Shown here piece after piece: positions 1 to 64,000 of a stretch of DNA of 64,000 bases (its first letter is position 1; each line of letters begins with the position of its first letter). Under the pieces are notes generated by a model. The model saw nothing but the letters and a program-made list of their open reading frames with translations, was not told the DNA's origin and made no database searches. The stretch is from NCBI GenBank assembly GCA_964057225.1, contig OZ059896.1:9362001-9426000 (forward strand). The letters are read 5' to 3'. The DNA comes from Auanema rhodensis. Lineage: Eukaryota > Animalia > Nematoda. The translations under genes and the position numbers were made by a program.

Positions 1-654
1 TGCGAATTCAGCCTATTCTTCTCATACACTGTTTATCATGTGTCGTTTTCCTTCTTTTCTATCTACCGTCTACTCCAACTGATGGGGCAACATTCACAAT
101 TGCAAGTTGCTTCTATTCTCTCGTAACGAGAGAGTAATCCAGTCTAGTGTCCATTCTGCTTGATGCTGGCCTTCATCCACAACCTGCTATATCTTTTTCA
201 TCATTTTCTGTATGTTCTCAGAAGATTACGAACAGTATCTTTACCATCTTTTTTGAGTAATGTTGTTTATTGTAATATCTTATCAATTAGTTTTGAATTA
301 TTTTAATTGCATTATATGCATTTTCTAAAATATATATTATAGTAATATTATTATATAATGTAACATTATTATGGTCATTTTTTTTTAATTCTAATCTATC
401 ATTGAAATTATATTCTTATCAAACTTTGAATACTAAAATGGAAAATTAAACTGACCCTATCATAAAATCGACAGACGGCATACTATTCTTATCCTGTTGG
501 ACCCCAACGAACTGGTCATTCTGGCTTACTGCTTCATTCATCATTATCCCTGTTTCTTTTTTCTGATATCTCTGTTCAAGTTTCAAATTTTACGTAATAT
601 TGCGCAATTTCTGTTATTTATTTGCCTTCAAACTTGATAAGCTTATTTCAGAAT

Positions 655-4668
<4,014 letters not shown>

Positions 4669-5744
4669 ATTTAAACTTGCACAATGTGCATCACCTAACA
4701 TATCTGAAAATATCTGTTCATTTTGAATATACTATATACTATTTACTAAAACGAAAGAAAATTCATTGACTAATACCAAATATAAACACAATTTTTACAA
4801 TATATTTATGTAAATTGATTGTTTTTTTGTTACTGTAATTTAAATTTAAATTATGCTGACAACTTCTTGCATGATTTTCATGTTATTATTTATCATATAT
4901 TGAAATTTTTATTTCTGTTGAATGCTTTCAATATGATTCCAAACTTCATACATAGAATAAATTATTTATTTTTCTTATTTTTTTATTATTTAAAGTTTTA
5001 TAAGTAATTTGATAATAATAGCTCAAATAGTTGAGTTCATATCAGCAGAATTATCAATGTTTCATCCTGTTTCTCTGTGAACTTCTTTATATGCTCGTTT
5101 GCCTTATCAGTTTCTTCTTAACTATAAAGAAATCATCAAATATTATATATTATTATAAATTTCTAAGGATTATTTTAATATATTTAAAGAAATAATGATA
5201 ACTATTATCATAGTTATCAATGAATTATTATAATATCAGTTAAACTATATTATTATATATCGATAGTTGACTTTATTGTTTATATTTTAGTATAGATTTT
5301 ATATATTTTGCATGATGCTTGCTTGTGTCCAATATTTTGGTCAATGAATTCATACATTGGTTGCCTGGGTTTTGTGTGATCTATATATTTTTCTCTCATA
5401 TTATATACATATCTTTCCAAATATTAGCTATATAGTTAGTCAGAAAATGAATAATTATTATAAAAATATAAAAATTAAAAGAAATTAAATTATAAATATT
5501 ATAAAGATATAAATATATTATAGAAATTTCTTGAAATTACTATCCTAAAACAAACTTGATAGTGCATCTGTATCAAGCTAACAACCATTATCGACAAAAC
5601 TGAAATGACTATTATGTACATGTGCACGTATCATATAAGATTTGTTCTTGCTCATTTCAAGGCTTCATTTATTGATATCATAATTCAAAATTTCAGTTTC
5701 TGTTAAATATTTGCTATACTTTGGAATTATATGACAAGATTAGT

Positions 5745-7290
5745 ATGAAACATGGTTTACGAATCGACAATCTTAGTTCACGAATATTGTCAGTTAAAAA
5801 AGAGGTATGTTTACTTTTAATATACATGTATATATATATATATCAATTGAATCATATTATATGATACCTTATACTATATATTATATTATATATTTAATAA
5901 ATATTCATTTTCTTTTATTTTAGGTATGGATTAAACTATTTATAGTAATATTAATATGTTCATATTCTCTATATATAGTACTTAAAGAAGATCAAAGGTT
6001 TGTTTCATCATAACTATTCATTTTCATATTTTATCTTTTTTTTTTTCATTTTAGAACAGAAATTGATACGTTGAGGACAAATGTCAAATCAAGTGCAGTT
6101 GATAAATTACCAAAAAAGGGAAAATTGTTTTGTTGGGTTCAAACTTCTCCAAAATATCATAAAACTCGGGTAGCTTTTCCTAACTATTTGAATTTATTTA
6201 TATATAATTCATTTATTATTTTATAATTTTTTTAAAAATATATTAAGGTACCAGCAGTTAATAGTACATGGCTAACACGTTGTGATCATGGTCAATTCTT
6301 TTCATCAGAAACAATAGAAGATAGCTCAATACCACATACTGTGTTATTTGAATCAATGGAAGATTCGTGGTATCAATTATATAGAAAAACACGTTATGCA
6401 TTTTATCATATTTATACTTCAATTTCCTCAGATTTTGAATGGTATCTTAAGGTAATATTATTATTTTTTAATATTTTAAACTTATTCTCACAGGCTGATG
6501 ATGATACTTATGTTATTGTTGAACATTTATTAGAATATTTATCAACTTTGAATAGTAGTAAACCATACTTGATAGGACATACATTCAAACCATTTTTAGT
6601 TAGTCATATTCGTTTTTTTTTAATTTTCTCAAATCATTTTAATTTTTATAGGAACATGGATATGTTGCTGGTGGAGCTTATGCAATCTCTAAAGAAGCAT
6701 TAAAGATATATGCTGAACAATTATATAATAATACCTCTGATTGTTTATTAACTGGAGAATTTGAAGATCTTGAAATTAGCAGGTTTGTTTCGAAATATTA
6801 ATAATTGTAAAAGCTGATTTATTTTGATAATTGTATACCCACTTGACACATGTATGTACAAAATCGTATGAGTTTTATATACATGTATATAATATTCAGA
6901 AAAATATAATATTTGAATATTCTTATATTAAAATAGAAATTATTAATTTAAAAAAATGAAATGTTTCAGATGTTTTGCCAGCAAAAATATTTTTCCAATT
7001 GATACGAGAAATTCAAAAGGTCAACAACGCTTCCATCCGGAATCACCTTTAACTATTTTGAATAAAGCCGAAGAAACCGATGAATATGCTATGAATACAG
7101 TATTAATAGTATCAAACATTTTCTAATTTATGATATAATCTTGTTTATTCAGGGTGAACAAGCATTTGGTATTGACACTATTACATTTCATCATCTAAAA
7201 CCATCAGATATTAGAATATTAGATGCAGTATTATATAAGATAAAATCTCCTCAACTTTCAGAATTCTTCAACAAAAAAATCAATGATTAA
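5745..7290 (+). CDS. Core-1 beta-1,3-galactosyltransferase-like (C1GALT1/fringe-like, GT31), type II membrane protein
   Basis: N-terminal hydrophobic anchor WIKLFIVILICSYSLYIVL; LFCWVQTSPKYHKTR, VNSTWLTRCD, WYLKADDDTYVIVEHL (DxD), GYVAGGAYAISKEAL, EDLEISRCF, QRFHP, TITFHHL; TAA at 7288-7290. Confidence 0.85.
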
Positions 7291-8454: not shown

Positions 8455-8935
8455 ATGGTTGTACCAAATGATACAATGGTTTTAAATGTGAAACCACATG
8501 TGGGAAAGTTTTCAAACTCTGCAGGGCGTGCAATACATCATATTTATAATTTAACACATCGTCGTATGGCATTCAAAGTATTCTATTTAATTATGTTTTC
8601 TTCATACATACTTTTTTTTCATCATATATACCACAAAATAATAATAAATTCAATTTTATTTTATTAGGTTAAATGTACTAATAATCGTTCTTACCGAGTA
8701 CGGCCCGTGTATGGTTTCGTTGAAGCCAAAGCTACAACAGTTCTAGAAATTCGTAAACTTAAAGGAAAAGTGAAAAGAGACCAATTTATAATTCAATATG
8801 CTGAAGTCTATTTGTCTTTTGTTATTGTGAATTATGTTACTTATTAAGGTTCCAATGGAAGAAAGAAATCCTAAAGCACCATTCATAGCTAAGGTTGAAG
8901 CCGGTGAAGTCATATTACCTGTGCAAACTGATTAA
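8455..8935 (+). CDS. MSP-domain protein, SSP-like, 3 exons
   Basis: HHIYNLTHRRMAFK|VKCTNNRSYRVRPVYGFVEAKATTVLEI...QYAE|VPMEERNPKAPF...VILPVQTD*; intron positions equivalent to those of the neighbouring gene. Confidence 0.85.
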
Positions 8936-9392
8936 TTTAAAATACTATTTTAATCATATAAATATGTAACATGTTGTTAAAATAATATAAATAAATTTTT
9001 TTGTTCTCAAACTATAATCAAGCGTACAAATGTATTATATAATATGCTAATGAATCACGTATCACGCAAAAATATTAAAAACTAGAAGTTTAGACATATG
9101 GCTTATTATAATAATTTTTGATTTTTAATAAAAATACAATTTACGTGATATTTTTTTCACGTAACTTATGAACGATTCGCAGTTTATCATAGAAGTCTAC
9201 TAAATAATTCAGAAGGCTTATGGAAAAAATGAGGTAAAAATCAAATACAAGGAAATAGAAAAAAAAAAGATGAAAAATAAATATTTAAAATGATAAGAAG
9301 TATTAGTGATAATAAAACAATTTACTATTTGCATATTTATATATATATATATATATATATAAGAGTATTCAAAGTAGATCTATGATATAACA

Positions 9393-10927
9393 ATGAAGAT
9401 CATTGCGTTGGCCGTGATTCTGCATACAGTATTCCTTGGTATTGTTCAAGCAACGGTTAGCGAATATTCACATTTCACATCTTTTTAAAACAAAACATTT
9501 CCAGATTGACAAATGTGATGTATGTCTGAAAATAGCAACTCTTGCTAAGAAATGTGGAGATGGTAAAATTAGAATTATGGTAGTGTTGATACTTTTTATT
9601 CTCCTTCCAGATTACGAGGAGACAACGAAAGCGAAGGCTATGAAGGAAGTCGATGAGTACAATGACGAGGAAAAAGAATTTTTTAAAAATGAATTAAAGT
9701 AATTATTTTATTTTAGAAATATACATATCTTATCTATCTATTATATTTGTAGTTGTCATTGGGAAAAATATTACGCGGATGCTAATAGCCCTACAATTGC
9801 TGGAACTAATCCTCGTTCAACTTGCGCTGATACTGCTTGCTGTCCAGCTTCTGTAAGAAAAAAAATATTAATTTTCAAAATTATATTCTTTAAGGATCAA
9901 ATTGCAAATTTTACTACTGTTGATCTTACTAACACCAACAAACATTTCTCAAAAGATCGATGTGTTGTTCCGAAAATTATTTTACTTCACCATACGGTGA
10001 CAAAAACTATTGAAGAAACCTTACATGTAATGCAACAGGTTCCTGTTTCAGTACAATACATTGGTAATTTATAATAAAAACTGTACAAGTTATGAATTAT
10101 TTGAATTAGTTGCTAGAAATGGAACTATTTATCAGCTTTTCAATGATGCTGTTCGAGCTTGGCATGCCGGTGCTGGAACATTTATGGAAGTTGGAGATGT
10201 TAACACCTATTCCGTTGGCATCGAAATGGTTAACCATGGAGATGAGCCATTTGATACTGAACAGGTAATAATGTAAGCTAAACATGAAGCTTTAATGAGA
10301 AATTTAAAGATAAAATCAGTGAAACTGCTAGTTGATACATTGAGACTTCGTTGGCGTATTCGTGATAACTATGTGATTGGTCACATGGAAATTTCGTGAG
10401 TTTTCCTTGAGATAGACGAAAATATGATTTTGCTGTTAAGCCCTGATCGAAAGCAAGATCCTTCTGGTTATTTTCCATGGTCAGATTTGAATGACCACTT
10501 GGGTATTTTCCCAAAATTATACCAGACTAATATGAGTCCCGATGATATGAAGACTGTCTTAATCAACAGTAGTACAGGAACAGCTGATGAAATTAAAACT
10601 CTTCAAGATGACCTTAAGAAGCAAGTTTTTTATTTTTTTTTATTTTTTCAAGTATTAAATCTTAAGTTGGGGATATACCTACTTGGCAATGCAACCAGGA
10701 GTCCTTGATCGTAACACTACGTTTAATATTCTTGCCTTCAACCGTAGATATGCTCCTGAAGTGTTTGTGAAAGAAGTGATAATTAAAGCAAATCATTTAA
10801 ATTAAATTTTAAATTTCAGACCATAGCTGATGACAACATGATTCTTAATCCTCTGAACAACCAATGGTATCAAGTATCACAAGAACGACTATTGCGTCTA
10901 TTGAACTTACTTCCATTGCTTAAATAA
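9393..10927 (+). CDS. Secreted zinc N-acetylmuramoyl-L-alanine amidase (Amidase_2, AmiD/AmpD-like) with N-terminal saposin-like domain and C-terminal peptidoglycan-binding-like domain; 10 exons
   Basis: Signal peptide MKIIALAVILHTVFLGIVQA; Cys-rich CDVCLKI...NPRSTCADTACC. Amidase motifs IILLHHT, VSVQYIV.RNGTIYQL, RAWHAG, NTYSVGIE, VIGHMEISPDRKQDP.GYFPW. C-terminal IKTLQDDL..WGY...GVLDRNT...AFNRRY. Contiguous spliced frame with one GC-AG intron. Confidence 0.88.
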
Positions 10928-11132: not shown

Positions 11133-11954
11133 ATGCAAGCTATTGTGATTCTATTACTTCTATCAATAATATGTCTTACATTGAGTAATGTATGTTTTTC
11201 ATTTATATTTCTGATTTTTTCCTTTCACTAGTTAATTATAATTGTATTGTATATGTTATTATAATAGGAAGACCGATACAACATTTGTATTGATTTAGCC
11301 AAAAGAGCAAAGAAACAAGCTAATGGTTCGAAGAAATACATTGATAATAATTGAATATAGTACATTATAGGTACTGGGGTAAAAGCTCTCCAAGATGCAT
11401 CTTACTACTTTGGAAACGAAAAAAGATTTTATACGGATGAATTGAAGTAAATTTTTTATTTTTTTAATAATATAAACTCTCATCTTATTTCTATTAGATC
11501 AATCATTTCTCAAAAGATCGATGTGTTGTTCCGAAAATTATTTTACTTCACCATACGGTGACAAAAACTATTGAAGAAACCTTACATGTAATGCAACAGG
11601 TTCCTGTTTCAGTACAATACATTGGTAATTTATAATAAAAACTTTACAAGTTATAAATTATTTGAATTAGTTGCTAGAAATGGAACTATTTATCAGCTTT
11701 TCAATGATGCTGTTCGAGCTTGGCATGCCGGTGCTGGAACATTTATGGAAGTTGGAGATGTTAACATCGTCATTATATTCCGGAAGCATTTGAGAAGGAG
11801 GCTAGTTTCGAAAAACAAAAAATTTAACAATTTATTGTTTTTTTAGGGATTTGCGGGAGAATTAACTGTTACTAATCCTTATAATCAGTAATGGTTCAAG
11901 TTATCTAAAGAAAGATTGGAACGCCTTCTAATTCCTTTGCCTACTTTAATTTAA
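11133..11954 (+). pseudogene. Chimeric pseudogene paralog of the amidase gene
   Basis: Own diverged signal and saposin-like exons (MQAIVILLLLSIICLTLSN, EDRYNICIDLAKRAKK). A 263-bp near-identical copy of 9943-10205 lies at 11504-11766, followed by a frame-shifted jump to a diverged C-terminus (HRHYIPEAFEKE; NPYNQ*WFKLSKERLERLL) with an in-frame stop. Confidence 0.8.
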
Positions 11955-12230: not shown

Positions 12231-14163
12231 TTACAGTTCCACTAGATAACCGTTATAGTTATTAACAGTGACAAGCTGTTGCGAAGTATCAAGACTAGGT
12301 CGGCTTGTTTGTGTGTGCCATACTAGAAGTTCCTGCTCCTAAAAATCAAAATGTATTTCTACATGTCAGCTTGTGAATGAAGTTTCAACAAACCAAACAC
12401 TCATCATTTTACTCAAAAATAGATAATATTAGTTATGTTAATTAGGTGATTACACAAAATTACAAATATATATATGTCTATTATACTATTTATTGTGTAC
12501 CTGTTTTCTTCTTTTCCGTTTCTTTTTCATTTTCTTCCTTTTTTTTGTGATCTGATGTTTCCGTCTGAAATCATTATAAAGGATATGGTTATTGTGCTTT
12601 GGTTAGTTAAACATCATATATAACAAATAGCTAACATTATTTTCTTTGATCTTATATTCGTATATGAATCCATTTAAATCAGCTTTGCTCATATCATAAT
12701 TAGGTTGATTACTCTTTGTGTGCCATACAACAATATCACGATCGTGCTACAACATAATAACTAGATTATTAGATACATAGTTGGTTGATTTATGAAAATA
12801 TTATTTCAATATAATTTGTATTTGAATTCTATTTTCACCTCACCTCTCTATCATATCCAAATGGTTCAATATCTTTACGTGTTAATCCCATATCTTCTAT
12901 TAAACAAGTTTCTGGTGCTCCACCACCGCGACCACAAGAAGTACCAAACACTGCTGTCGAGCTGAAAGCATATTGTCTTTCTCTATTGAATATACAACTA
13001 AGTTTATACTTGAATACAACTCTTAGATTAATACCAAAACCAGCCATATCCACAGCAAACATTCGGGATGGATTCCACTTCACACGAAAACCGACAACAG
13101 TTCCATTTACAACATCAGGTGATTCAACTGGGGCTCCTCCAACCATACCTATTGGTTACAGAAAGTATTAATGATTAGGCTTTTTTTTAAAAAACAGCTT
13201 ACCAACAGCCCATAATCCAAGCTTTTTAACATTTCGTAAATACTGATTGAATAAACGAATATCATATGAATTGTCATCATCGCCAAAGTATAAAACACCC
13301 TCTTTATGGCCATTCAAAATCTCTTTTTGATTTTTTCTCAAATAATTCAATGCTACCGTTCTTTGATACCATCCACGCTCGAAAACAGAATTTTGTCTCA
13401 GATTGTATACAATAATGACCTACTTGGATATCCAGTAATTGTTTTGGCTGCTAAATAAGAATATGGTAATCCAGTTCGATTGAGAAGCCGCTCAATATAT
13501 TTATGTTTTTTTTCTGAATCTTCAATAACAATCCAATGTAAATCTTTGATCAACATTAATGTATTTGCCATTCTAAAGAAAGCATTATATAATATTATAT
13601 TTAATGAATGAACTATTTATAAAAACCTAGTTAAATCTGCGAGTCTTGTAGCTCTTTTGTATGTTGGAGTGATGACCACAACTAACGGTTGTTTTGCCCC
13701 AGAAAAAAAAGGCATCTGATTGAAAACAGAGCTGGAAAAACTGATCAAATAGTGTTTGAATAGGATTATATAATACTATACCTATCTAAAGATGTACGAA
13801 AAAATGTAAAAACAAGAAATGATGTGATGAAAAACATGAAAAACTTGAAAATATGATAACGTCCATATCTCATTTGTCTACGCATATCTCCTGAAACTAA
13901 GAAATAGTTAAAATAATATAAATAATATGAAGAATATCAAATACATACCTACAGGAAATCCCCATCGTCTATCGACATCCTTCTCACAAAGTTTATCCCA
14001 AGCTTCAGTATTCCCCTTCACTATAATTGAAATCAGAAATATAGATTGGTGAAGATATACAGATCATTTAGAAAAAATGGGATGTACAAACACAAAGTGT
14101 TCAATGTAAAATATATGGTTTATGGAATAAAATATAAACTTACTTAGTTATAAGCAATTGCAT
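12231..14163 (-). CDS. GT43 glucuronosyltransferase (B3GAT/GlcAT; glct/sqv-8 family) with two alternative 3' ends
   Basis: VVVITPTYKRATRLADLTR, LHWIVIED, RGWYQRTVALNYLR, GVLYFGDDDNSYD, FAVDMAGF, PETCLIEDMG and terminal VWHT motifs; N-terminal TM segment. Start codon is less certain. Confidence 0.88.
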
Positions 14164-14496: not shown

Positions 14497-15047
14497 GTTT
14501 AAATCTTCATATATATCACATCAACAAATGCTTACTATATTCGGAAAGAAACAGATACATAAACTCAATGTTGATCTCTCTCAATCTCTCAAGCTCTCTT
14601 AAAATTTTCATATTATAAACTTGAACAAAAGAAAAGCCAACTATTTTTTAATATATGAATTTAAACTTTATAACAAATATGAATAGAAATGGTAAGCCAC
14701 TAAAATTATTAAAAAATATGAGTTTATTTGTTTTTCAAAAGATTCAACTCATTAACGAAGTTCTGGATAAAGTTATTCGCTTAAGAGAGATTCACAGGAA
14801 GAACATTTTTAAATATAATAGCTGAAAAGCTGATAAGCTATTGGAATTTGTATAACGAAAAACGAATCCCTGTTAGGCTTGGAGATCCGGGTGAAGCTAG
14901 AACATAGCAGCTAAATAATCAAGAGGCGTGGAAGCTGTTTTAAATTTTTTTTTGCCATCATAGCCAACAATCTTCTATGATCTGTTATTTCATTCTCTTT
15001 CAATTTCTCTTGTTCTGTCTCCTTCCCTTTACCCATTTCTCCTCTCT

Positions 15048-15055
<8 letters not shown>

Positions 15056-15104
<49 letters not shown>
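15056..15104. repeat. (CT)n microsatellite
   Basis: Pure CT run; produces the spurious SLSL/ERER ORFs in the track. Confidence 0.95.
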
Positions 15105-15111
<7 letters not shown>

Positions 15112-17827
15112 AGAATAGAAGTTTCTACATTCTGCACTCTCTGTTCAATCCTCTTGTTTCTCGTCAATTTTTCTCTTTTCATTATAGGATCCCATTCTAT
15201 ATCAAACTTCAGCTGTTCGAGCAAATAGTCATGTTGGTTATTCCCATGTTAGATACCATGTCTGGTATCACTTTTTTCTATTTGACGCTAATCGGGAGAT
15301 ATAGCAGATGTTGGATCAAATTGTCAATGTCAAAGCGGCAAACATTAATTCCCATACATTTTTAAATGATTTAAAAATCTATTAGAAATACAATTACAAT
15401 AATTGAAATTAAAAATAAAGGTTTAAAGGAAACTAAAATGATAACATAGTAAAGTCGGAAGTGAAATATGATTCCATTCAAAATAATCACCTTATTCGTT
15501 TCTATGGAGAAATGAGCTATAAACGAACAATGACGTTAATCTTTTAAAGATCTTTAAAACGAAACCAAAAAAGGCTTCTGAGCATGAACTACATAGAAAG
15601 AACAAACATTTCGAAAAAACTAGGTTATATGTGAAAATAAAATAACATAAAAACAGTTTAAAAAGACAGATATAATTTGAAATAAAAAACAGATTTGTTA
15701 TTATTAGGTAATCTATAGATTGGGTGAGCGTATAGCTAAAAGAGAATAAAATAAAATAAACCATCTATATCGACAAAAATCACAATGGGTGGCGATACTG
15801 TTGTGTTCTGAGGTTGAACACTGTCATTATGATATGTCATGGATTAAGTCTGTCTTACTTCACCTCAAGTACTTCATGGAACCCATGAACATTAAAAATA
15901 AACAATATTTGTTATTGTTATCAACTTTTATCAAAAAAAAAAAGGAACTGGTAATATTAGAAGACAATAAGATAATTATTATTTTGTTACGTATAGATAG
16001 AATTCTTCCTCACAAATGAACACAACAGTAGAAATCATTTGGAATGAAAATTCAATTATGGACGGACATACATACTCTTGAATGTGAGTGAAGCTTATAA
16101 CAAAAAAATTTTTGTATTTTGAATGAAAAGGTTCAGTTTATTCGGACGACAATCGGATTGTCACTGGTTCAGTAGCGATGATGAATCAAGACATCTGGGA
16201 AAATTGAATGGATTCAGATGATTGAAACACGGAAAGTATAACGAGACAACTATCATGACAATAGTATTAAAACTGTATGAAAGTAAAGATGTATGACTTA
16301 TTCTGCTTTTAAAACTGTGAACTTTGACAAGTTTTCCAAAGAAAAGCGAATATTTAATGAAACTAAGCTTTTTATAAAACCAGGAATAAGAATTATTTAT
16401 GAACTAACTTACTTTGAAGGTATAATGACTCTTTTATGAAATTAATTAATACAAAACGTCAATATTATGTTTTTGAAAATACATGGTCAATACGATTTAT
16501 GAACAATTAACTTAGAAAATGAAACTTCAACGGAAAAATGACGTTTGGCATACTTCGGTTTCTAGAAATCTTCTTATTTTTGAAGATTAAGCGGAGCAAC
16601 TAACTAGATACAAATTGCAAGAAAAGATGAGCGGACGTTTTCACCAAATAGAACGGAATTTTCTTATAGAAACTCTGCTTGTTCTTCAGTTCGCAGATCT
16701 TTTTTAGACGAATGTTTCAGGAACGAGCCACTATTGTCACCTTTCATATTTGCACAAATGAAAATTGGTCAGATAGTTGATGCATCAGTTAAATAATTAT
16801 TTTCCCATCTTTAAAACTTATCAAATTAAGCTTTAATTGACTCATTTAAATTCTTTATTTATTATTGATTTATTTTCTCTGAGTTTAAAAATAACTTTAG
16901 AGCATAGATTATTATGGAAAACAGTTGAAAATATTTGATCAGGTCTCTCCTGTACATCATCATCATCATCATAAATAAACTTTGAATATTTTGAGTGACC
17001 ACAATAGTATATTTGAATTACTTAAAACAACTTCGATTTCTTCTGAAGTATGATGAAACATGACCGTTGTATATATTTTTTTTCAAATTTGAGCAATTTA
17101 TTCTATATTTTGAAAAAAAATGAAATTAAAGATAAAACAAACAGACATAAGAATCAAGCATTTATTCAGCATGAAGTACAGTTGAACTTTTTTTTTAAAA
17201 TTCATACTCATATATTCAAGTTATATTATTATAGAAAATGTATATGTGCATTTCAAATGAAATATTTAATAAAAGATATAAGATGATGATCATAAACGTT
17301 AATTTCCTTTTTAAATAGAAACAATGTGTTGGTTGATTGACTTCATTCCTGAATTTATTATTATAAAATTAAATTTTTTATTTTTGAATTATTTTTAAAA
17401 CAAAATAATTTTGAATGTAATAGTATGTATGAATATTCAATACAGTTACATACCTATATATACATATGTTTGTGTAATTGTAGATTTATGCTTAAAACGT
17501 ATGTATAATCCAGTCATTTGAACACAATACTACTGTTACTAATTATATAAATATTAATATAAATAATATAAAACAGAATTTAGCAAACATTTATTGATTC
17601 AGATTAATTATTCTGAGAAGAGTTAAAATTAATTTTATTAATCCAATATACAGACATATACATTTTTTTCAGCGCAATATAGTACAAACAACATAACATT
17701 ATACTAAATGTGAAAGCCCGTGAACAGCCGGACAACGGCATGAGCAACAGTTTAGCTGTGTTCCAACATATTCAACAAAAATATATGGAAGTATTGATGT
17801 AACAGCTCCTTACTTTAAGTTACCAAT

Positions 17828-57850: not shown

Positions 57851-57923
57851 GGTCTTGTGGTGTAGTGGTTATCACGTCTGCTTTACACGCAGAAGGTCGT
57901 CGGTTCGAACCCGGCCAAGACCT
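57851..57923 (+). tRNA. tRNA-Val(TAC), first of 26 TAC copies in the array
   Basis: Acceptor GGTCTTG/CAAGACC, A box TGGTGTAGTGG, anticodon arm TCTGC-TT[TAC]AC-GCAGA, B box GGTTCGAACCC, TTTT terminator about 5 nt downstream. Confidence 0.97.
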
Positions 57924-59128
57924 GTTCTTTTGAAGGATTTTAGTCCAAAATCATTAGAGTACCATGTCACTGTATGTTTTATCGATAAACTACACTTTTT
58001 CTATTGACCACTAGTTTGTTGGAGCCCAATTGATCTGGCGCCATGTATGCTAGCACATCATAAGGTCTTGTGGTGTAGTGGTTATCACGTCTGCTTTACA
58101 CGCAGAAGGTCGTCGGTTCGAACCCGGCCAAGACCTGTTCTTTTGAAGGATTTTAGTCCAAAATCATTAGAGTACCATGTCACTGTATGTTTTATCGATA
58201 AACTACACTTTTTCTATTGACCACTAGTTTGTTGGAGCCCAATTGATCTGGCGCCATGTATGCTAGCACACCATAAGGTCTTGTGGTGTAGTGGTTATCA
58301 CGTCTGCTTTACACGCAGAAGGTCGTCGGTTCGAACCCGGCCAAGACCTGTTCTTTTGAAGGATTTTAATCCAAAATCAGCAGAGTACCGTGTCACTGTA
58401 TGTTTTATCGATAAACTACACTTTTCCTATTGACCACTAGTTTGTTGGAGTCCAATTCATCTGGCGCCATGTATGCTAGCACATCATAAGGTCTTGTGGT
58501 GTAGTGGTTATCACGTCTGCTTTACACGCAGAAGGTCGTCGGTTCGAACCCGGCCAAGACCTGTTCTTTTGAAGGATTTTAATCCAAAATCATCAGAGTA
58601 CCGTGTCACTGTATGTTTTATCGATAAACTTCATTTTTCCTATTGACCACTAGTTTGTTGGAGTCCAATTCATCTGGCGCCATGTATGCTAGCACATCAT
58701 AAGGTCTTGTGGTGTAGTGGTTATCACGTCTGCTTTACACGCAGAAGGTCGTCGGTTCGAACCCGGCCAAGACCTGTTCTTTTGAAGGATTTTAATCCAA
58801 AATCATCAGAGTACCGTGTCACTGTATGTTTTATCGATAAACTTCATTTTTCCTATTGACCACTAGTTTGTTGGAGTCCAATTCATCTGGCGCCATGTAT
58901 GCTAGCACATCATAAGGTCTTGTGGTGTAGTGGTTATCACGTCTGCTTTACACGCAGAAGGTCGTCGGTTCGAACCCGGCCAAGACCTGTTCTTTTGAAG
59001 GATTTTAATCCAAAATCATTAGAGTACCGTGTCACTGTATGTTTTATCGATAAACTTCATTTTTCCTATTGACCACTAGTTTGTTGGAGCCCAATTGATC
59101 TGGCGCCATGTATGCTAGCACATCATAA

Positions 59129-59201
59129 GGTCTTTTGGTGTAGTGGTTATCACGTCTGCTTTACACGCAGAAGGTCGTCGGTTCGAACCCGGCCAAGACC
59201 T
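59129..59201 (+). tRNA. tRNA-Val(TAC) variant G7>T with acceptor-stem mismatch (copy 7; repeated at 62537-62609)
   Basis: GGTCTTTTGG instead of GGTCTTGTGG. Confidence 0.85.
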
Positions 59202-60619
59202 GTGCTTTTGAAGGATTTTAGTCCAAAATCATTAGAGTACCGTGTCACTGTATGTTTTATCGATAAACTACACTTTTCCTATTGACCACTAGTTTGTTGG
59301 AGTCCAATTCATCTGGCGCCATGTATGCTAGCACATCATAAGGTCTTGTGGTGTAGTGGTTATCACGTCTGCTTTACACGCAGAAGGTCGTCGGTTCGAA
59401 CCCGGCCAAGACCTGTGCTTTTGAAGGATTTTAGTCCAAAATCATAAGAGTACCGTCTCACTGTATGTTTTATCGATAAACTACATTTTTCCTATTGTAC
59501 ACTAGTTTGTTGGAGCCCAATTGATCTGGCGCCATGTATGCTAGCACATCATAAGGTCTTGTGGTGTAGTGGTTATCACGTCTGCTTTACACGCAGAAGG
59601 TCGTCGGTTCGAACCCGGCCAAGACCTGTTCTTTTGAAGGATTTTAATCCAAAATCATCAGAGTACCGTGTCACTGTATGTTTTATCGATAAACTACATT
59701 TTTCCTATTGACCACTAGTTTGTTGGAGCCCAATTGATCCGGCGCCATGTATGCTAGCACATCATAAGGTCTTGTGGTGTAGTGGTTATCACGTCTGCTT
59801 TACACGCAGAAGGTCGTCGGTTCGAACCCGGCCAAGACCTGTTCTTTTGAAGGATTTTAATCCAAAATCATCACAGTACCGTGTCACTGTATGTTTTATC
59901 GATAAACTACACTTTTCCTATTGACCACTAGTTTGTTGGAGCCCAATTGATCTGGCGCCATGTATGCTACCACATCATAAGGTCTTGTGGTGTAGTGGTT
60001 ATCACGTCTGCTTTACACGCAGAAGGTCGTCGGTTCGAACCCGGCCAAGACCTGTTCTTTTGAAGGAATTTAATCCAAAATCATTAGAATACCGTGTCAC
60101 TGTATGTTTTATCGATAAACTACATTTTTCCTATTGACCACTAGTTTGTTGGAGCCCAATTGATCCGGCGCCATGTATGCTAGCACATCATAAGGTCTTG
60201 TGGTGTAGTGGTTATCACGTCTGCTTTACACGCAGAAGGTCGTCGGTTCGAACCCGGCCAAGACCTGTTCTTTTGAAGGATTTTAATCCAAAATCATCAG
60301 AGTACCGTGTCACTGTATGTTTTATCGATAAACTACATTTTTCCTATTGACCACTAGTTTGTTGGAGCCCAATTGATCTGGCGCCATGTATGCTAGGAGA
60401 TCATAAGGTCTTGTGGTGTAGTGGTTATCACGTCTGCTTTACACGCAGAAGGTCGTCGGTTCGAACCCGGCCAAGACCTGTTCTTTTGAAGGATTTTAAT
60501 CCAAAATCATAAGAGTACCGTCTCACTGTATGTTTTATCGATAAACTACACTTTTCCTATTGACCACTAGTTTGTTGGAGTCCAATTCATCTGACGCCAC
60601 GTTTGCTAGCACATCATAA

Positions 60620-60692
60620 GGTCTTGTGGTGTAGTGGTTATCACGTCTGCTTCACACGCAGAAGGTCGCCGGTTCGAACCCGGCCAAGACCT
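60620..60692 (+). tRNA. tRNA-Val(CAC), copy 14
   Basis: TCTGC-TT[CAC]AC-GCAGA with T-stem GCCGG/CCGGC. Confidence 0.95.
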
Positions 60693-60832
60693 GTGCTTTT
60701 GAAGGATTTTAGTCCAAAATCATTAGAGTACCGTGTCACTGTATGTTTTATCGATAAACTACACTTTTCCTATTGACCACTAGTTTGTTGGAGTCCAATT
60801 CATCTGGCGCCACGTTTGCTAGCACATCATAA

Positions 60833-60905
60833 GGTCTTGTGGTGTAGTGGTTATCACGTCTGCTTCACACGCAGAAGGTCGCCGGTTCGAACCCGGCCAA
60901 GACCT
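60833..60905 (+). tRNA. tRNA-Val(CAC), copy 15
   Basis: TCTGC-TT[CAC]AC-GCAGA with T-stem GCCGG/CCGGC. Confidence 0.95.
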
Positions 60906-61897
60906 GTGCTTTTGAAGGATTTTAGTCCAAAATCATAAGAGTACCGTCTCACTGTATGTTTTATCGATAAACTAAATTTTTCCTATTGTACACTAGTTTG
61001 TTGGAGCCCAATTGATCTGGCGCCATGTATGCTACCACATTATAAGGTCTTGTGGTGTAGTGGTTATCACGTCTGCTTTACACGCAGAAGGTCGTCGGTT
61101 CGAACCCGGCCAAGACCTGTTCTTTTGAAGGATTTTAATCCAAAATCATAAGAGTACCGTCTCACTGTATGTTTTATCGATAAACTACATTTTTCCTATT
61201 GAACACTAGTTTGTTGGAGCCCAATTGATCTGGCGCCATGTATGCTAGGACATCATAAGGTCTTGTGGTGTAGTGGTTATCACGTCTGCTTTACACGCAG
61301 AAGGTCGTCGGTTCGAACCCGGCCAAGACCTGTTCTTTTGAAGGATTTTAATCCAAAATCATCAGAGTACCGTGTCACTGTATGTTTTATCGATAAACTA
61401 CATTTTTCCTATTGAACACTAGTTTGTTGGAGCCCAATTGATCTGGCGCCATGTATGCTAGCACGTCATAAGGTCTTGTGGTGTAGTGGTTATCACATCT
61501 GCTTTACACGCAGAAGGTCGTCGGTTCGAACCCGGCCAAGACCTGTTCTTTTGAAGGATTTTAATCCAAAATCATCACAGTACCGTGTCACTGTATGTTT
61601 TATCGATAAACTACATTTTTCCTATTGAACACTAGTTTGTTGGAGCCCAATTGATCTGGCGCCATGTATGCTAGCACGTCATAAGGTCTTGTGGTGTAGT
61701 GGTTATCACGTCTGCTTTACACGCAGAAGGTCGTCGGTTCGAACCCGGCCAAGACCTGTTCTTTTGAAGGATTTTAATCCAAAATCATCACAGTACCGTG
61801 TCACTGTATGTTTTATCGATAAATTACACTTTTCCTATTGACCACTAGTTTGTTGGAGCCCAATTGATCTGGCGCCATGTATGCTACCACATCATAA

Positions 61898-61970
61898 GGT
61901 CTTGTGGTGTAGTGGTTATCACGTCTGCTTCACACGCAGAAGGTCGCCGGTTCGAACCCGGCCAAGACCT
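61898..61970 (+). tRNA. tRNA-Val(CAC), copy 20
   Basis: TCTGC-TT[CAC]AC-GCAGA with T-stem GCCGG/CCGGC. Confidence 0.95.
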
Positions 61971-64000
61971 GTTCTTTTGAAAGATTTTAATCCAAAATCA
62001 TTACAGTACCGTGTCACTGTATGTTTTATCGATAAACTTCATTTTTCCTATTGACCACTAGTTTGTTGGAGTCCAATTCATCTGGCGCCATGTATGCTAG
62101 CACATCATAAGGTCTTGTGGTGTAGTGGTTATCACGTCTGCTTTACACGCAGAAGGTCGTCGGTTCGAACCCGGCCAAGACCTGTTCTTTTGAAGGATTT
62201 TAATCCAAAATCATCAGAGTACCGTGTCACTGTATGTTTTATCGATAAACTTCATTTTTCCTATTGACCACTAGTTTGTTGGAGTCCAATTCATCTGGCG
62301 CCATGTATGCTAGCACATCATAAGGTCTTGTGGTGTAGTGGTTATCACGTCTGCTTTACACGCAGAAGGTCGTCGGTTCGAACCCGGCCAAGACCTGTTC
62401 TTTTGAAGGATTTTAATCCAAAATCATTAGAGTACCGTGTCACTGTATGTTTTATCGATAAACTTCATTTTTCCTATTGACCACTAGTTTGTTGGAGCCC
62501 AATTGATCTGGCGCCATGTATGCTAGCACATCATAAGGTCTTTTGGTGTAGTGGTTATCACGTCTGCTTTACACGCAGAAGGTCGTCGGTTCGAACCCGG
62601 CCAAGACCTGTGCTTTTGAAGGATTTTAGTCCAAAATCATTAGAGTACCGTGTCACTGTATGTTTTATCGATAAACTACACTTTTCCTATTGACCACTAG
62701 TTTGTTGGAGTCCAATTCATCTGGCGCCATGTATGCTAGCACATCATAAGGTCTTGTGGTGTAGTGGTTATCACGTCTGCTTTACACGCAGAAGGTCGTC
62801 GGTTCGAACCCGGCCAAGACCTGTGCTTTTGAAGGATTTTAGTCCAAAATCATAAGAGTACCGTCTCACTGTATGTTTTATCGATAAACTACATTTTTCC
62901 TATTGTACACTAGTTTGTTGGAGCCCAATTGATCTGGCGCCATGTATGCTAGCACATCATAAGGTCTTGTGGTGTAGTGGTTATCACGTCTGCTTTACAC
63001 GCAGAAGGTCGTCGGTTCGAACCCGGCCAAGACCTGTTCTTTTGAAGGATTTTAATCCAAAATCATCAGAGTACCGTGTCACTGTATGTTTTATCGATAA
63101 ACTACATTTTTCCTATTGACCACTAGTTTGTTGGAGCCCAATTGATCCGGCGCCATGTATGCTAGCACATCATAAGGTCTTGTGGTGTAGTGGTTATCAC
63201 GTCTGCTTTACACGCAGAAGGTCGTCGGTTCGAACCCGGCCAAGACCTGTTCTTTTGAAGGATTTTAATCCAAAATCATCACAGTACCGTGTCACTGTAT
63301 GTTTTATCGATAAACTACACTTTTCCTATTGACCACTAGTTTGTTGGAGCCCAATTGATCTGGCGCCATGTATGCTACCACATCATAAGGTCTTGTGGTG
63401 TAGTGGTTATCACGTCTGCTTTACACGCAGAAGGTCGTCGGTTCGAACCCGGCCAAGACCTGTTCTTTTGAAGGAATTTAATCCAAAATCATTAGAATAC
63501 CGTGTCACTGTATGTTTTATCGATAAACTACATTTTTCCTATTGACCACTAGTTTGTTGGAGCCCAATTGATCCGGCGCCATGTATGCTAGCACATCATA
63601 AGGTCTTGTGGTGTAGTGGTTATCACGTCTGCTTTACACGCAGAAGGTCGTCGGTTCGAACCCGGCCAAGACCTGTTCTTTTGAAGGATTTTAATCCAAA
63701 ATCATCAGAGTACCGTGTCACTGTATGTTTTATCGATAAACTACATTTTTCCTATTGACCACTAGTTTGTTGGAGCCCAATTGATCTGGCGCCATGTATG
63801 CTAGGAGATCATAAGGTCTTGTGGTGTAGTGGTTATCACGTCTGCTTTACACGCAGAAGGTCGTCGGTTCGAACCCGGCCAAGACCTGTTCTTTTGAAGG
63901 ATTTTAATCCAAAATCATAAGAGTACCGTCTCACTGTATGTTTTATCGATAAACTACACTTTTCCTATTGACCACTAGTTTGTTGGAGTCCAATTCATCT

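What the first reader, a model, noticed from the sequence alone, without database searches (positions are those of the whole stretch)
9393..10927. Intron-containing, secreted bacterial-type (AmiD/AmpD) peptidoglycan amidase in a nematode: likely domesticated horizontal transfer
Seen: a 10-exon gene with short nematode-style introns, flanked by ordinary nematode genes, so contamination is unlikely. It encodes IILLHHT, RAWHAG, N.YSVGIE, VIGH.EISPDRK.DP..FPW and a C-terminal LQ..L..WGY...G.LD..T...AF.RRY segment. Known: this is the architecture of proteobacterial AmiD (Amidase_2 plus peptidoglycan-binding domain) with His/His/Asp zinc ligands and a catalytic Glu, all present here. Animal PGRPs use His/His/Cys, C. 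elegans has no PGRPs, and AmiD transfers are known in sap-feeding insects. Inference: a bacterial gene domesticated for digesting bacterial food or for immunity.
Basis: partly seen in the sequence, partly recalled or inferred. Interest (0 to 1): 0.9.

Follow-up and report, generated by a model that had tools for sequence, protein, structure and literature searches.

The report
Nematode secreted AmiD-type peptidoglycan amidase
This is a real, spliced and expressed nematode gene for a secreted bacterial-type cell-wall amidase; it is bacterial in origin, but it is the counterpart of a transfer already published for hookworms and belongs to an old family found in many nematodes.

Summary
Window 9393-10927 (+) holds a 10-exon, 371-aa gene with nine introns of 42-54 nt. 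RNA contigs from four runs support all nine, including one GC-AG intron.

The protein has a signal peptide, a Cys-containing helical N-terminal module, an Amidase_2 catalytic domain and a degenerate PG_binding_1-like tail. The catalytic domain carries the AmiD/AmpD residue set: His135, Glu198, His236, Lys244, Asp246. Sequence profile and predicted fold rank E. coli AmiD and Pseudomonas AmpDh2 far above animal PGRPs.

The horizontal-transfer reading holds but is not new. Schwarz et al. 2015 (PMC4617383) described amiD transfer in Ancylostoma and Necator. This gene is 43% identical to the Necator protein and shares its intron positions.

New here:
- The family also occurs in Auanema, Cylicocyclus, Diploscapter, Enterobius and Plectus, and forms one clade.
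- Auanema keeps 9 of 9 intron positions and the same neighbouring genes.
- The N-terminal module derives from a saposin-like domain; Plectus has CUB instead.
- The closest bacterial relatives are two genes of a Rickettsiaceae sea-urchin symbiont that share a unique C-terminal insertion. The direction of that exchange is unresolved.
- A truncated pseudogene copy lies just downstream.

The scan noted this stretch twice before (the same finding, and the saposin note). I found no report of it on other DNA.

The parts
9393..10927 (+). Whole amidase gene: 10 exons, 9 introns, 371 aa
   Evidence: Gene model; splice junctions in RNA contigs of 4 runs
9393..9455 (+). Exon 1: signal peptide (hydrophobic core, V-Q-A before the predicted cut after residue 20)
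   Evidence: Translation; no signal-peptide predictor was available, so this is inferred from the sequence
9505..9852 (+). Exons 2-4: Cys-containing helical N-terminal module (Cys25, 28, 38, 71, 94, 99, 100), a derived saposin-like domain that has lost the middle disulfide pair
   Evidence: Alignment with relatives that keep the canonical saposin Cys spacing; the model of relative P0027 matches saposin C at TM 0.84; Pfam sees no SapB
9970..10465 (+). Amidase_2 catalytic domain (about residues 129-248, exons 5-8)
   Evidence: Pfam PF01510 on exon 6 alone, E 2e-11; ortholog residues 128-247, E 1e-26; PDB profile and fold hits to AmiD and AmpDh2
9988..9990 (+). His135, first zinc ligand (LLHHT)
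   Evidence: Nearly invariant column in a 40-sequence alignment; alignment with AmiD, AmpD and T7 lysozyme
10223..10225 (+). Glu198, catalytic glutamate (SVGIE)
   Evidence: Invariant column E197 of the ortholog; aligns with the Glu of SIGIE in E. coli AmiD and AmpD
10382..10459 (+). His236 (zinc ligand 2), Lys244 and Asp246 (zinc ligand 3) in GHMEISPDRKQDP, interrupted by intron 7
   Evidence: Same H-x7-K-x-D spacing as E. coli AmiD and AmpD; Asp stands where T7 lysozyme has Cys
10621..10666 (+). Intron 8, GC-AG (GT-AG at the same position in Auanema)
   Evidence: Junction 10620>10667 in contigs of X1-X4 (table 8); intron comparison
10586..10924 (+). PG_binding_1-like helical tail plus the family-specific C-terminal insertion and helix (AFNRRY.PE.F.KE ... 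N..WY.VS.ERL)
   Evidence: PG_binding_1 passes the threshold in Plectus, P0027 and P0011 but not in the Auanema ortholog; the AmiD fold alignment spans both domains; the insertion is shared only with Rickettsiaceae H1
11133..11950 (+). Truncated tandem duplicate (pseudogene). It lacks the equivalents of exons 4, 7 and 8, has an out-of-frame deletion joint after 11766, and has a TAA inside the conserved N.QW motif of the last exon
   Evidence: tblastn of the gene product against the window; sequence reading
11500..11766 (+). 267-nt tract 98.9% identical to 9939-10205 (part of exon 5, intron 5, part of exon 6) inside the otherwise diverged copy; probable gene conversion
   Evidence: blastn of the gene against the copy

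Best explanation
The gene encodes a secreted zinc-dependent N-acetylmuramoyl-L-alanine amidase of the bacterial AmiD/AmpDh2 type. A signal peptide directs it out of the cell. The Amidase_2 domain (His135, His236 and Asp246 holding zinc; Glu198 and Lys244 in catalysis) would cut the amide bond between MurNAc and the L-Ala stem peptide of peptidoglycan or muropeptides. The helical tail descends from the AmiD peptidoglycan-binding domain, and the N-terminal module descends from a saposin-like lipid-binding domain.

The gene is the ortholog of the hookworm amiD reported as a bacterial transfer in 2015. It belongs to a single nematode family acquired once from bacteria before Plectida and Rhabditida split. 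It has since been inherited vertically with its introns, fused to animal-type N-terminal modules, and lost in some lineages.

Shown here: the gene structure, its transcription and splicing, domain identity, conserved catalytic residues, one nematode clade inside the bacterial AmiD clade, and shared introns and synteny. Inferred: enzyme activity, secretion, and a role in digesting or killing ingested bacteria or degrading peptidoglycan fragments.
For: - Gene model and composition; all nine junctions in RNA contigs of four runs.
- Pfam Amidase_2 on exon 6, E 2e-11, and on full-length orthologs, about 1e-27.
- Family profile against PDB sequences: AmpDh2 7.5e-36, AmiD 1.4e-34, AmpD 1e-19, and no PGRP or T7 lysozyme at E<=10.
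- Model of the 57%-identical ortholog (pLDDT 84.5): best folds are AmiD 3d2y at 1e-12 (TM 0.69 by target, 267 columns), then AmpDh2, AmpDh3 and AmpD; PGRPs only near 1e-5.
- Catalytic and zinc residues aligned with E. coli AmiD and AmpD; Asp at the position of the T7 Cys.
- Relatives by full-length BLASTP: Auanema 57%, Cylicocyclus 47%, Necator 43%. Further members are Diploscapter, Plectus and Enterobius.
- Intron positions and phases: 9/9 shared with Auanema, 8/9 with Cylicocyclus, 5 with the partial Necator model.
- Same neighbouring genes in Auanema.
- Careful trees: the nematode rows form one clade (93/85 with 8 rows; 96/85 with Enterobius added), inside an AmiD clade (99/99) with E. coli AmiD, Pseudomonas and Bacteroidota.
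- Prior report of the hookworm gene: PMC4617383.
Against: - No enzyme assay exists for any nematode member.
- The PG-binding tail is below the Pfam threshold in the closest ortholog (14.5 against 23 bits) and unrecognised on the window's exon 9.
- The full-length window protein could not be handed to the Pfam, fold or database tools because it has no reference. Domain and fold statements therefore rest on single exons and on the 57%-identical ortholog.
- The tissue and stage of expression in this species are unknown.
- Absence from Caenorhabditis was not tested here.
- Most neighbouring rows in the trees are unnamed environmental sequences assumed to be bacterial.
Confidence: 0.85

Rival explanations
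1. The gene is an old animal gene inherited vertically (a PGRP-like metazoan family), not a transfer from bacteria.
For: The family is widespread in nematodes, with old conserved introns and animal-type N-terminal domains.
Against: No PGRP is reached by the profile at E<=10, and PGRP folds rank seven orders of magnitude below AmiD. The third zinc ligand is Asp as in AmiD/AmpD, where T7 lysozyme has Cys. The clade is nested in bacterial AmiD with 99/99 support. No other animal member was found; the Dreissena hit is a repeat artefact.
Confidence: 0.04
2. The protein is a non-catalytic peptidoglycan sensor or binding protein rather than an enzyme.
For: Many animal Amidase_2 proteins (PGRPs) are receptors, and the PG-binding tail here is degenerate.
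Against: In Rhabditina, Enterobius and P0011, both His, the Glu, the Lys and the Asp are conserved. Two exceptions exist: P0011 has Gly-Lys at the Arg-Lys position, and the Diploscapter gene model lacks that region.
Confidence: 0.08
3. The Rickettsiaceae H1 genes derive from an animal (nematode-type) gene. In that case the symbiont is a recipient and tells nothing about the donor of the nematode family.
For: AU tests do not reject placing the Rickettsiaceae genes inside the nematode clade (p 0.14 and 0.17). The symbiont copies sit on a long branch (1.9) and their N-terminal part is broken by frame changes. Rickettsiales are known to take up host genes (my own knowledge).
Against: The best tree puts them outside a monophyletic nematode clade (93/85 and 96/85). 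They lack the saposin or CUB modules in the ORFs read.
Confidence: 0.2
4. This species acquired the gene independently of the hookworms.
For: The 2015 paper found it only in two hookworms.
Against: One clade, shared intron positions and phases, the same architecture and conserved synteny with Auanema.
Confidence: 0.02

Closest known systems
Hookworm amiD (Ancylostoma ceylanicum Acey_s0012.g1873; Necator americanus NECAME_15163), Schwarz et al. 2015, PMC4617383
   Same: It falls in the same clade, at 43% identity to the Necator protein. It has nine introns, and five of the six introns in the partial Necator model sit at the same positions. The Amidase_2 core and the C-terminal motif are the same.
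   Different: This gene comes from a different rhabditid with a compact, AT-rich genome (introns about 45 nt, against 600-1500 nt in Necator). The ninth intron sits 14 codons away from the strongylid position. The paper reported no other nematode homolog, described no N-terminal module and, in the text held, named no donor.
E. coli AmiD (PDB 2bh7, 3d2y) and Pseudomonas AmpDh2 (4bj4)
   Same: Two-domain layout of Amidase_2 plus a helical PG-binding domain, with His/His/Asp zinc site, Glu and Lys. They are the best sequence-profile and fold matches.
   Different: AmiD is an outer-membrane lipoprotein with a lipobox. The nematode protein has a eukaryotic-type signal peptide, an added N-terminal saposin-derived module, a 10-12-residue insertion before the last helix, and only about 23-27% identity in the fold alignments of the ortholog model.
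Aphid and mealybug amiD acquired from rickettsial bacteria (Nikoh et al. 2010, PMC2829048)
   Same: A bacterial AmiD gene domesticated by an animal. The nearest bacterial kin here is also a member of Rickettsiales.
   Different: It is a separate event in a different phylum. No insect sequence was placed in my trees, so the relation between the two transfers is untested.
Animal PGRPs and T7 lysozyme
   Same: They share the Amidase_2 fold.
   Different: T7 lysozyme has Cys at the third zinc ligand where this protein has Asp (the same is said of catalytic PGRPs, from my own knowledge). They have no PG_binding_1 tail. They were not reached by the sequence profile, and PGRP fold matches are much weaker.
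Saposin-like proteins (saposin C, NK-lysin, caenopores, Na-SLP-1)
   Same: Relatives of this gene (Enterobius, P0027, L004) carry an N-terminal domain with the six-Cys saposin spacing and a predicted saposin fold.
   Different: In the window protein the middle disulfide pair is gone and the last third of the module is modelled with low confidence in the ortholog. Pfam does not recognise it.

Membership tests
Amidase_2 / AmiD-AmpDh2 subfamily | Amidase_2 (PF01510) domain | tested here: met
   Exon 6 alone scores 44.7 bits, E 2e-11; orthologs score 94-99 bits
Amidase_2 / AmiD-AmpDh2 subfamily | Zinc ligands His, His, Asp | tested here: met
   His135, His236 and Asp246 align with the E. coli AmiD and AmpD ligand positions; Asp stands where T7 lysozyme has Cys
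Amidase_2 / AmiD-AmpDh2 subfamily | Catalytic Glu and the Lys two residues before the Asp | tested here: met
   Glu198 and Lys244 are present; the Glu column is invariant and the Lys column nearly invariant in 40 sequences
Amidase_2 / AmiD-AmpDh2 subfamily | C-terminal PG_binding_1 domain | tested here: inconclusive
   No Pfam hit on window exon 9. The Auanema ortholog scores 14.5 bits against a cut-off of 23, while Plectus (24.4), P0027 (24.7) and P0011 (27.5) pass. The fold model aligns over both AmiD domains.
Amidase_2 / AmiD-AmpDh2 subfamily | Lipoprotein signal and outer-membrane anchoring, as in E. coli AmiD | tested here: not met
   E. coli AmiD starts with a lipobox (LLAGC). The window protein has a plain hydrophobic signal with no lipobox.
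Amidase_2 / AmiD-AmpDh2 subfamily | MurNAc-L-Ala amidase activity | not testable with these tools
   This needs an enzyme assay
Nematode amiD family (hookworm HGT of Schwarz 2015) | Falls in one clade with NECAME_15163 | tested here: met
   Rhabditina clade 100/96 and nematode clade 93/85; 43% identity
Nematode amiD family (hookworm HGT of Schwarz 2015) | Shared spliceosomal intron positions | tested here: met
   9/9 with Auanema, 8/9 with Cylicocyclus, and 5 of the 6 introns of the partial Necator model
Animal PGRP | Sequence membership in the PGRP branch and Cys as third zinc ligand | tested here: not met
   No PGRP at E<=10 with the family profile; the residue is Asp; PGRP folds match only near 1e-5
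Saposin-like (SAPLIP) domain | Six Cys with spacing C-x2-C ... C-x10-C ... C-x5-C | tested here: not met
   The window and the other Rhabditina lack the middle pair. Relatives P0027, L004 and Enterobius P0204 have the full pattern.
Saposin-like (SAPLIP) domain | Saposin fold | tested here: inconclusive
   Relative P0027 matches saposin C at TM 0.84 and rmsd 1.8, but with Foldseek E of only 0.013. The ortholog model has three helices followed by a low-confidence stretch at residues 80-102. The window's own module could not be folded.

The most novel reading that the evidence does not exclude
A Rickettsiales-type intracellular bacterium gave an AmiD gene to a nematode ancestor before Plectida and Rhabditida diverged. 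The gene was then fused to a saposin-like membrane-active module (swapped for CUB in Plectus), making a two-part bacteriolytic secreted protein. It is kept by bacterivorous nematodes and by parasites with free-living stages or constant contact with gut bacteria, and has been lost repeatedly, for example in Caenorhabditis. This would make it one of the oldest functional bacterial genes in animals with a traceable donor lineage.
Probability: 0.35. Interest if true: 0.6.

Novelty: new member of a known kind. Interest (0 to 1): 0.45.

Why it matters
The transfer of amiD into nematodes is already in the literature, so this window adds a member rather than a new phenomenon. Four things are worth having.
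- The family is far older and wider than the "two hookworms only" of 2015, running from Plectus through Enterobius to Rhabditina, with introns and synteny conserved.
- It is fused to animal modules (saposin-like or CUB), which suggests a combined membrane and cell-wall attack.
- A Rickettsiaceae symbiont gene shares a unique insertion with it, giving a concrete lead to the donor lineage and a parallel to the aphid case.
- Auanema, a culturable free-living nematode (my own knowledge), carries a 57%-identical ortholog, so the function could be tested in a free-living species, which is hard to do in hookworms.

Tried and rejected
- Pfam on single exons: only exon 6 gave a hit, because the other pieces are too short.
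- The full-length window protein has no reference and was not typed in. Pfam, fold and database work used exon references and the ortholog P0002 as proxy. Local BLAST, alignments and trees used the spliced protein in scripts.
- The top hit of the exhaustive exon-6 search, a 940-aa Dreissena protein with 15 matched stretches, is a tandem repeat containing RNWHAEAG and not an amidase.
- The word-index protein searches returned few members and missed known ones.
- Plectus P0007 is not on record with DNA, so its introns could not be read.
- The supplement of Schwarz 2015 (tree and donor) is not held.
- Literature searches for Amidase_2 or amiD with nematodes found no paper beyond Schwarz 2015 in the library.
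- AU tests could not decide whether the Rickettsiaceae genes lie outside or inside the nematode clade.
- The junction 10062>11670 in runs X2 and X3 is a mapping ambiguity caused by the identical tract in the pseudogene, not a real 1607-nt intron.
- The Diploscapter gene model P0041 skips the His-Lys-Asp region and has odd introns. I treated it as a doubtful annotation and left it out of the trees.

Full report
**Observation**

Translating the region in three frames and joining ORF pieces at consensus splice sites gives one clean model of ten exons: 9393-9455, 9505-9562, 9611-9698, 9753-9852, 9895-10063, 10110-10264, 10310-10395, 10441-10620, 10667-10775 and 10820-10927. It encodes 371 residues. 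The nine introns are 42-54 nt and 21% GC; the CDS is 38% GC and the window 33%. Eight introns are GT-AG and intron 8 is GC-AG with a good GC-donor context.

Contigs of four RNA runs of one study (coded organism A) carry introns 1-7 and 9 as joints. The 10620>10667 junction appears in the pieces table of all four runs; its joint rows were dropped only because of a low-complexity stretch inside the intron. The gene is therefore real, transcribed and spliced exactly as modelled.

**Surroundings**

The neighbours are ordinary animal genes: a P5CS (AA_kinase plus aldehyde dehydrogenase) at about 600-4700, a Fringe-like glycosyltransferase at about 6040-7270, an MSP-domain gene at about 8470-8935 and a GT43 glucuronyltransferase at about 12620-14020. 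The same four families flank the ortholog in Auanema sp. JU1783. A tblastx comparison shows the same order, with the two-gene block of MSP plus amidase inverted. The exonic GC of the amidase (0.38) lies within the range of its neighbours (0.30-0.41). Contamination is excluded.

**What the protein is**

- Sequence families. Exon 6 alone hits Pfam Amidase_2 at E 2e-11. By sequence it finds only bacterial AmpDh2, AmpDh3, AmiD and AmpD among solved structures.
- Family profile. A profile of seven nematode-type relatives hits AmpDh2 (7.5e-36) and E. coli AmiD (1.4e-34) across both the catalytic and the PG-binding domain. AmpD scores 1e-19 and endolysins about 1e-5. No PGRP or T7 lysozyme appears at E<=10.
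- Catalytic residues. An alignment with E. coli AmiD, AmpD and T7 lysozyme, taken from annotated records, places His135, Glu198, His236, Lys244 and Asp246 on the zinc and catalytic positions. Asp stands where T7 lysozyme has Cys. MAFFT shifted the first His by one column against AmiD. The column that is invariant across the family is the first His of HHT.
- Fold. The spliced protein has no reference, so I folded the 57%-identical Auanema ortholog with a 40-sequence alignment (pLDDT 84.5, pTM 0.76). Foldseek ranks AmiD (1e-12, TM 0.69-0.70 by target, about 265 columns) first, then AmpDh2, AmpDh3 and AmpD. PGRPs follow only near 1e-5.
- PG-binding tail. It is degenerate in Rhabditina, at 14.5 bits in Auanema against a cut-off of 23. 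It passes in Plectus, P0027 and P0011.

**Relatives and prior art**

An exhaustive HMMER search with exon 6 found a 371-aa protein with the match at the same residues. This is the Auanema sp. JU1783 protein, 57% identical to the window product over its full length. Further members are:
- Cylicocyclus nassatus (47%) and Necator americanus (43%);
- Diploscapter pachys, with two tandem genes;
- Plectus sambesii, with several copies of CUB plus Amidase_2 plus PG_binding_1;
- Enterobius vermicularis;
- two environmental transcripts, L003/P0027 and L004/P0011.

The Necator protein is the one cited by Schwarz et al. 2015. I found no later paper on the wider family in the held library.

**Single origin and age**

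Mapping the proteins exactly onto their genomic loci gave these intron comparisons:
- Auanema shares all nine intron positions and phases with the window gene.
- Cylicocyclus shares eight.
- The partial Necator model shares five.
- Both strongylids have their ninth intron 14 codons upstream of the window position.

In trees of the amidase-to-C-terminus region the nematode-type rows form one clade. Support is SH-aLRT 99 in a 120-row quick tree of the domain, and 93/85 and 96/85 in careful trees. The internal order of Rhabditina against Plectus plus Enterobius-type rows is compatible with vertical descent. The clade sits inside a 99/99 group containing E. coli AmiD, Pseudomonas and Bacteroidota proteins, separate from the alphaproteobacterial AmiD-like group.

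The best bacterial matches in 185,579 species genomes reach only 30-42% identity, so the transfer is old. Presence in Plectida, Spirurina and Rhabditina puts it at or before the base of Chromadorea, with later losses. Absence from Caenorhabditis is from my own knowledge and was not tested here.

**A lead to the donor**

One locus from the genome scan, a 303-kb scaffold of "Rickettsiaceae bacterium H1", is a symbiont of the sea urchin Heliocidaris according to PMC10989825. It holds two tandem AmiD-like ORFs next to ispH. They are 35-37% identical to the window protein over its C-terminal half.

Alone among the bacterial sequences examined, these ORFs share the family's 10-12-residue insertion and end helix (FNRHFC.EIFIKEK ... 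NPEN.RWYKLSQQRL) and the EIKTLQ..LK.YGY stretch. The careful tree joins them to the nematode clade at 99/93, on columns that exclude the insertion. A tree forcing the nematodes to their next neighbours without the Rickettsiaceae genes is 13 log-likelihood units worse (p-AU 0.016; the group was chosen after seeing the tree).

The direction of transfer is open. Placing the symbiont genes inside the nematode clade is not rejected (p 0.14 and 0.17). The symbiont copies are also on a long branch, carry a roughly 75-residue insert, and have a frame-broken N-terminal part.

**N-terminal module**

An earlier scan note (s1-391278) called exons 2-4 saposin-like. Pfam does not see SapB in any member. However, P0027, L004 and Enterobius P0204 have the canonical spacing C-x2-C-x28-C-x10-C-x25-C-x5-C. 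The model of P0027 residues 1-112 has pLDDT above 93 for residues 21-90. Its best hits are exclusively saposin-family structures: saposin C (TM 0.84, rmsd 1.8), saposin A, NK-lysin, Na-SLP-1, granulysin and caenopore-5. The E-values are weak, about 0.01, as is usual for an 80-residue helical domain.

The window protein aligns to this module but lacks the middle Cys pair. The ortholog model is unreliable over residues 80-102. I read it as a derived saposin-like domain whose membrane activity is unproven. Plectus has a CUB domain in its place, so the N-terminal modules were added by domain shuffling after the transfer.

**Downstream copy**

At 11133-11950 lies a second, broken copy. It has its own signal-peptide exon and two short N-terminal exons (about 26% identity). 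A 267-nt tract (11500-11766) is 98.9% identical to 9939-10205, including intron 5. After it comes a deletion joint that jumps out of frame to the equivalent of the end of exon 9. The last exon has a TAA inside the conserved N.QW motif.

The copy lacks Glu198, His236, Lys244 and Asp246, so it cannot be an amidase. The identical tract in an otherwise diverged copy suggests gene conversion. RNA contigs of two runs stop exactly at the last shared base. This may mean the copy is weakly transcribed, but it is not proof.

**Mechanism and verdict**

The most likely function is a secreted zinc amidase that strips stem peptides from peptidoglycan of ingested or surrounding bacteria. The saposin-derived module may help it reach the wall. 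Digestion, defence and removal of peptidoglycan fragments are not distinguished by any data here.

The finding is real and correctly interpreted, but it is a new member of a published kind. The added value is the family's breadth and age, its fusions, the Rickettsiaceae link and the pseudogene.

Noticed in passing
window 57851-63887: A tandem array of 29 tRNA genes with a 213-nt period on the + strand (Rfam tRNA, 58-68 bits). Earlier scan notes call them tRNA-Val inside a TRPM intron; I did not check anticodons or the host gene.
   Followed up: no
window 11133-11950: A truncated tandem pseudogene of the amidase, carrying a 267-nt near-identical tract (probable gene conversion) inside otherwise diverged sequence.
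   Followed up: partly
window 10621-10666: Intron 8 uses a GC donor, while the orthologous Auanema intron is GT-AG. The junction is confirmed in RNA contigs.
   Followed up: yes
L031 1-2073 (Rickettsiaceae bacterium H1 scaffold_2): Two tandem AmiD-like ORFs carry a roughly 75-residue insert between the WHAG and GIE motifs. The N-terminal part is split over frames. In the second copy RQQN replaces RKQD, so the Lys and the zinc-binding Asp are lost. They are possibly decaying genes.
   Followed up: partly
L009 6001-7849 and 8557-13681 (Diploscapter pachys): Two adjacent Amidase_2 genes. The second gene call also carries SnoaL_2/DUF4440 hits.
   Followed up: no
L005 6001-11909 (Necator americanus): The deposited 263-aa model lacks the signal and saposin-like exons and the whole PG-binding exon present in Cylicocyclus, so the published hookworm protein is probably an incomplete gene model.
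   Followed up: no
window 9338-9362 and about 15040-15130: A (TA)n microsatellite lies directly upstream of the amidase start codon. A long (CT/GA)n run reads as SLSLSL or RERERE in ORF lists.
   Followed up: no
P0001 (Dreissena polymorpha KAH3724716.1): A 940-aa protein made of a roughly 45-residue repeat containing RNWHAEAGT topped the exon-6 search through 15 short matches. It is a repeat artefact, not an amidase.
   Followed up: yes
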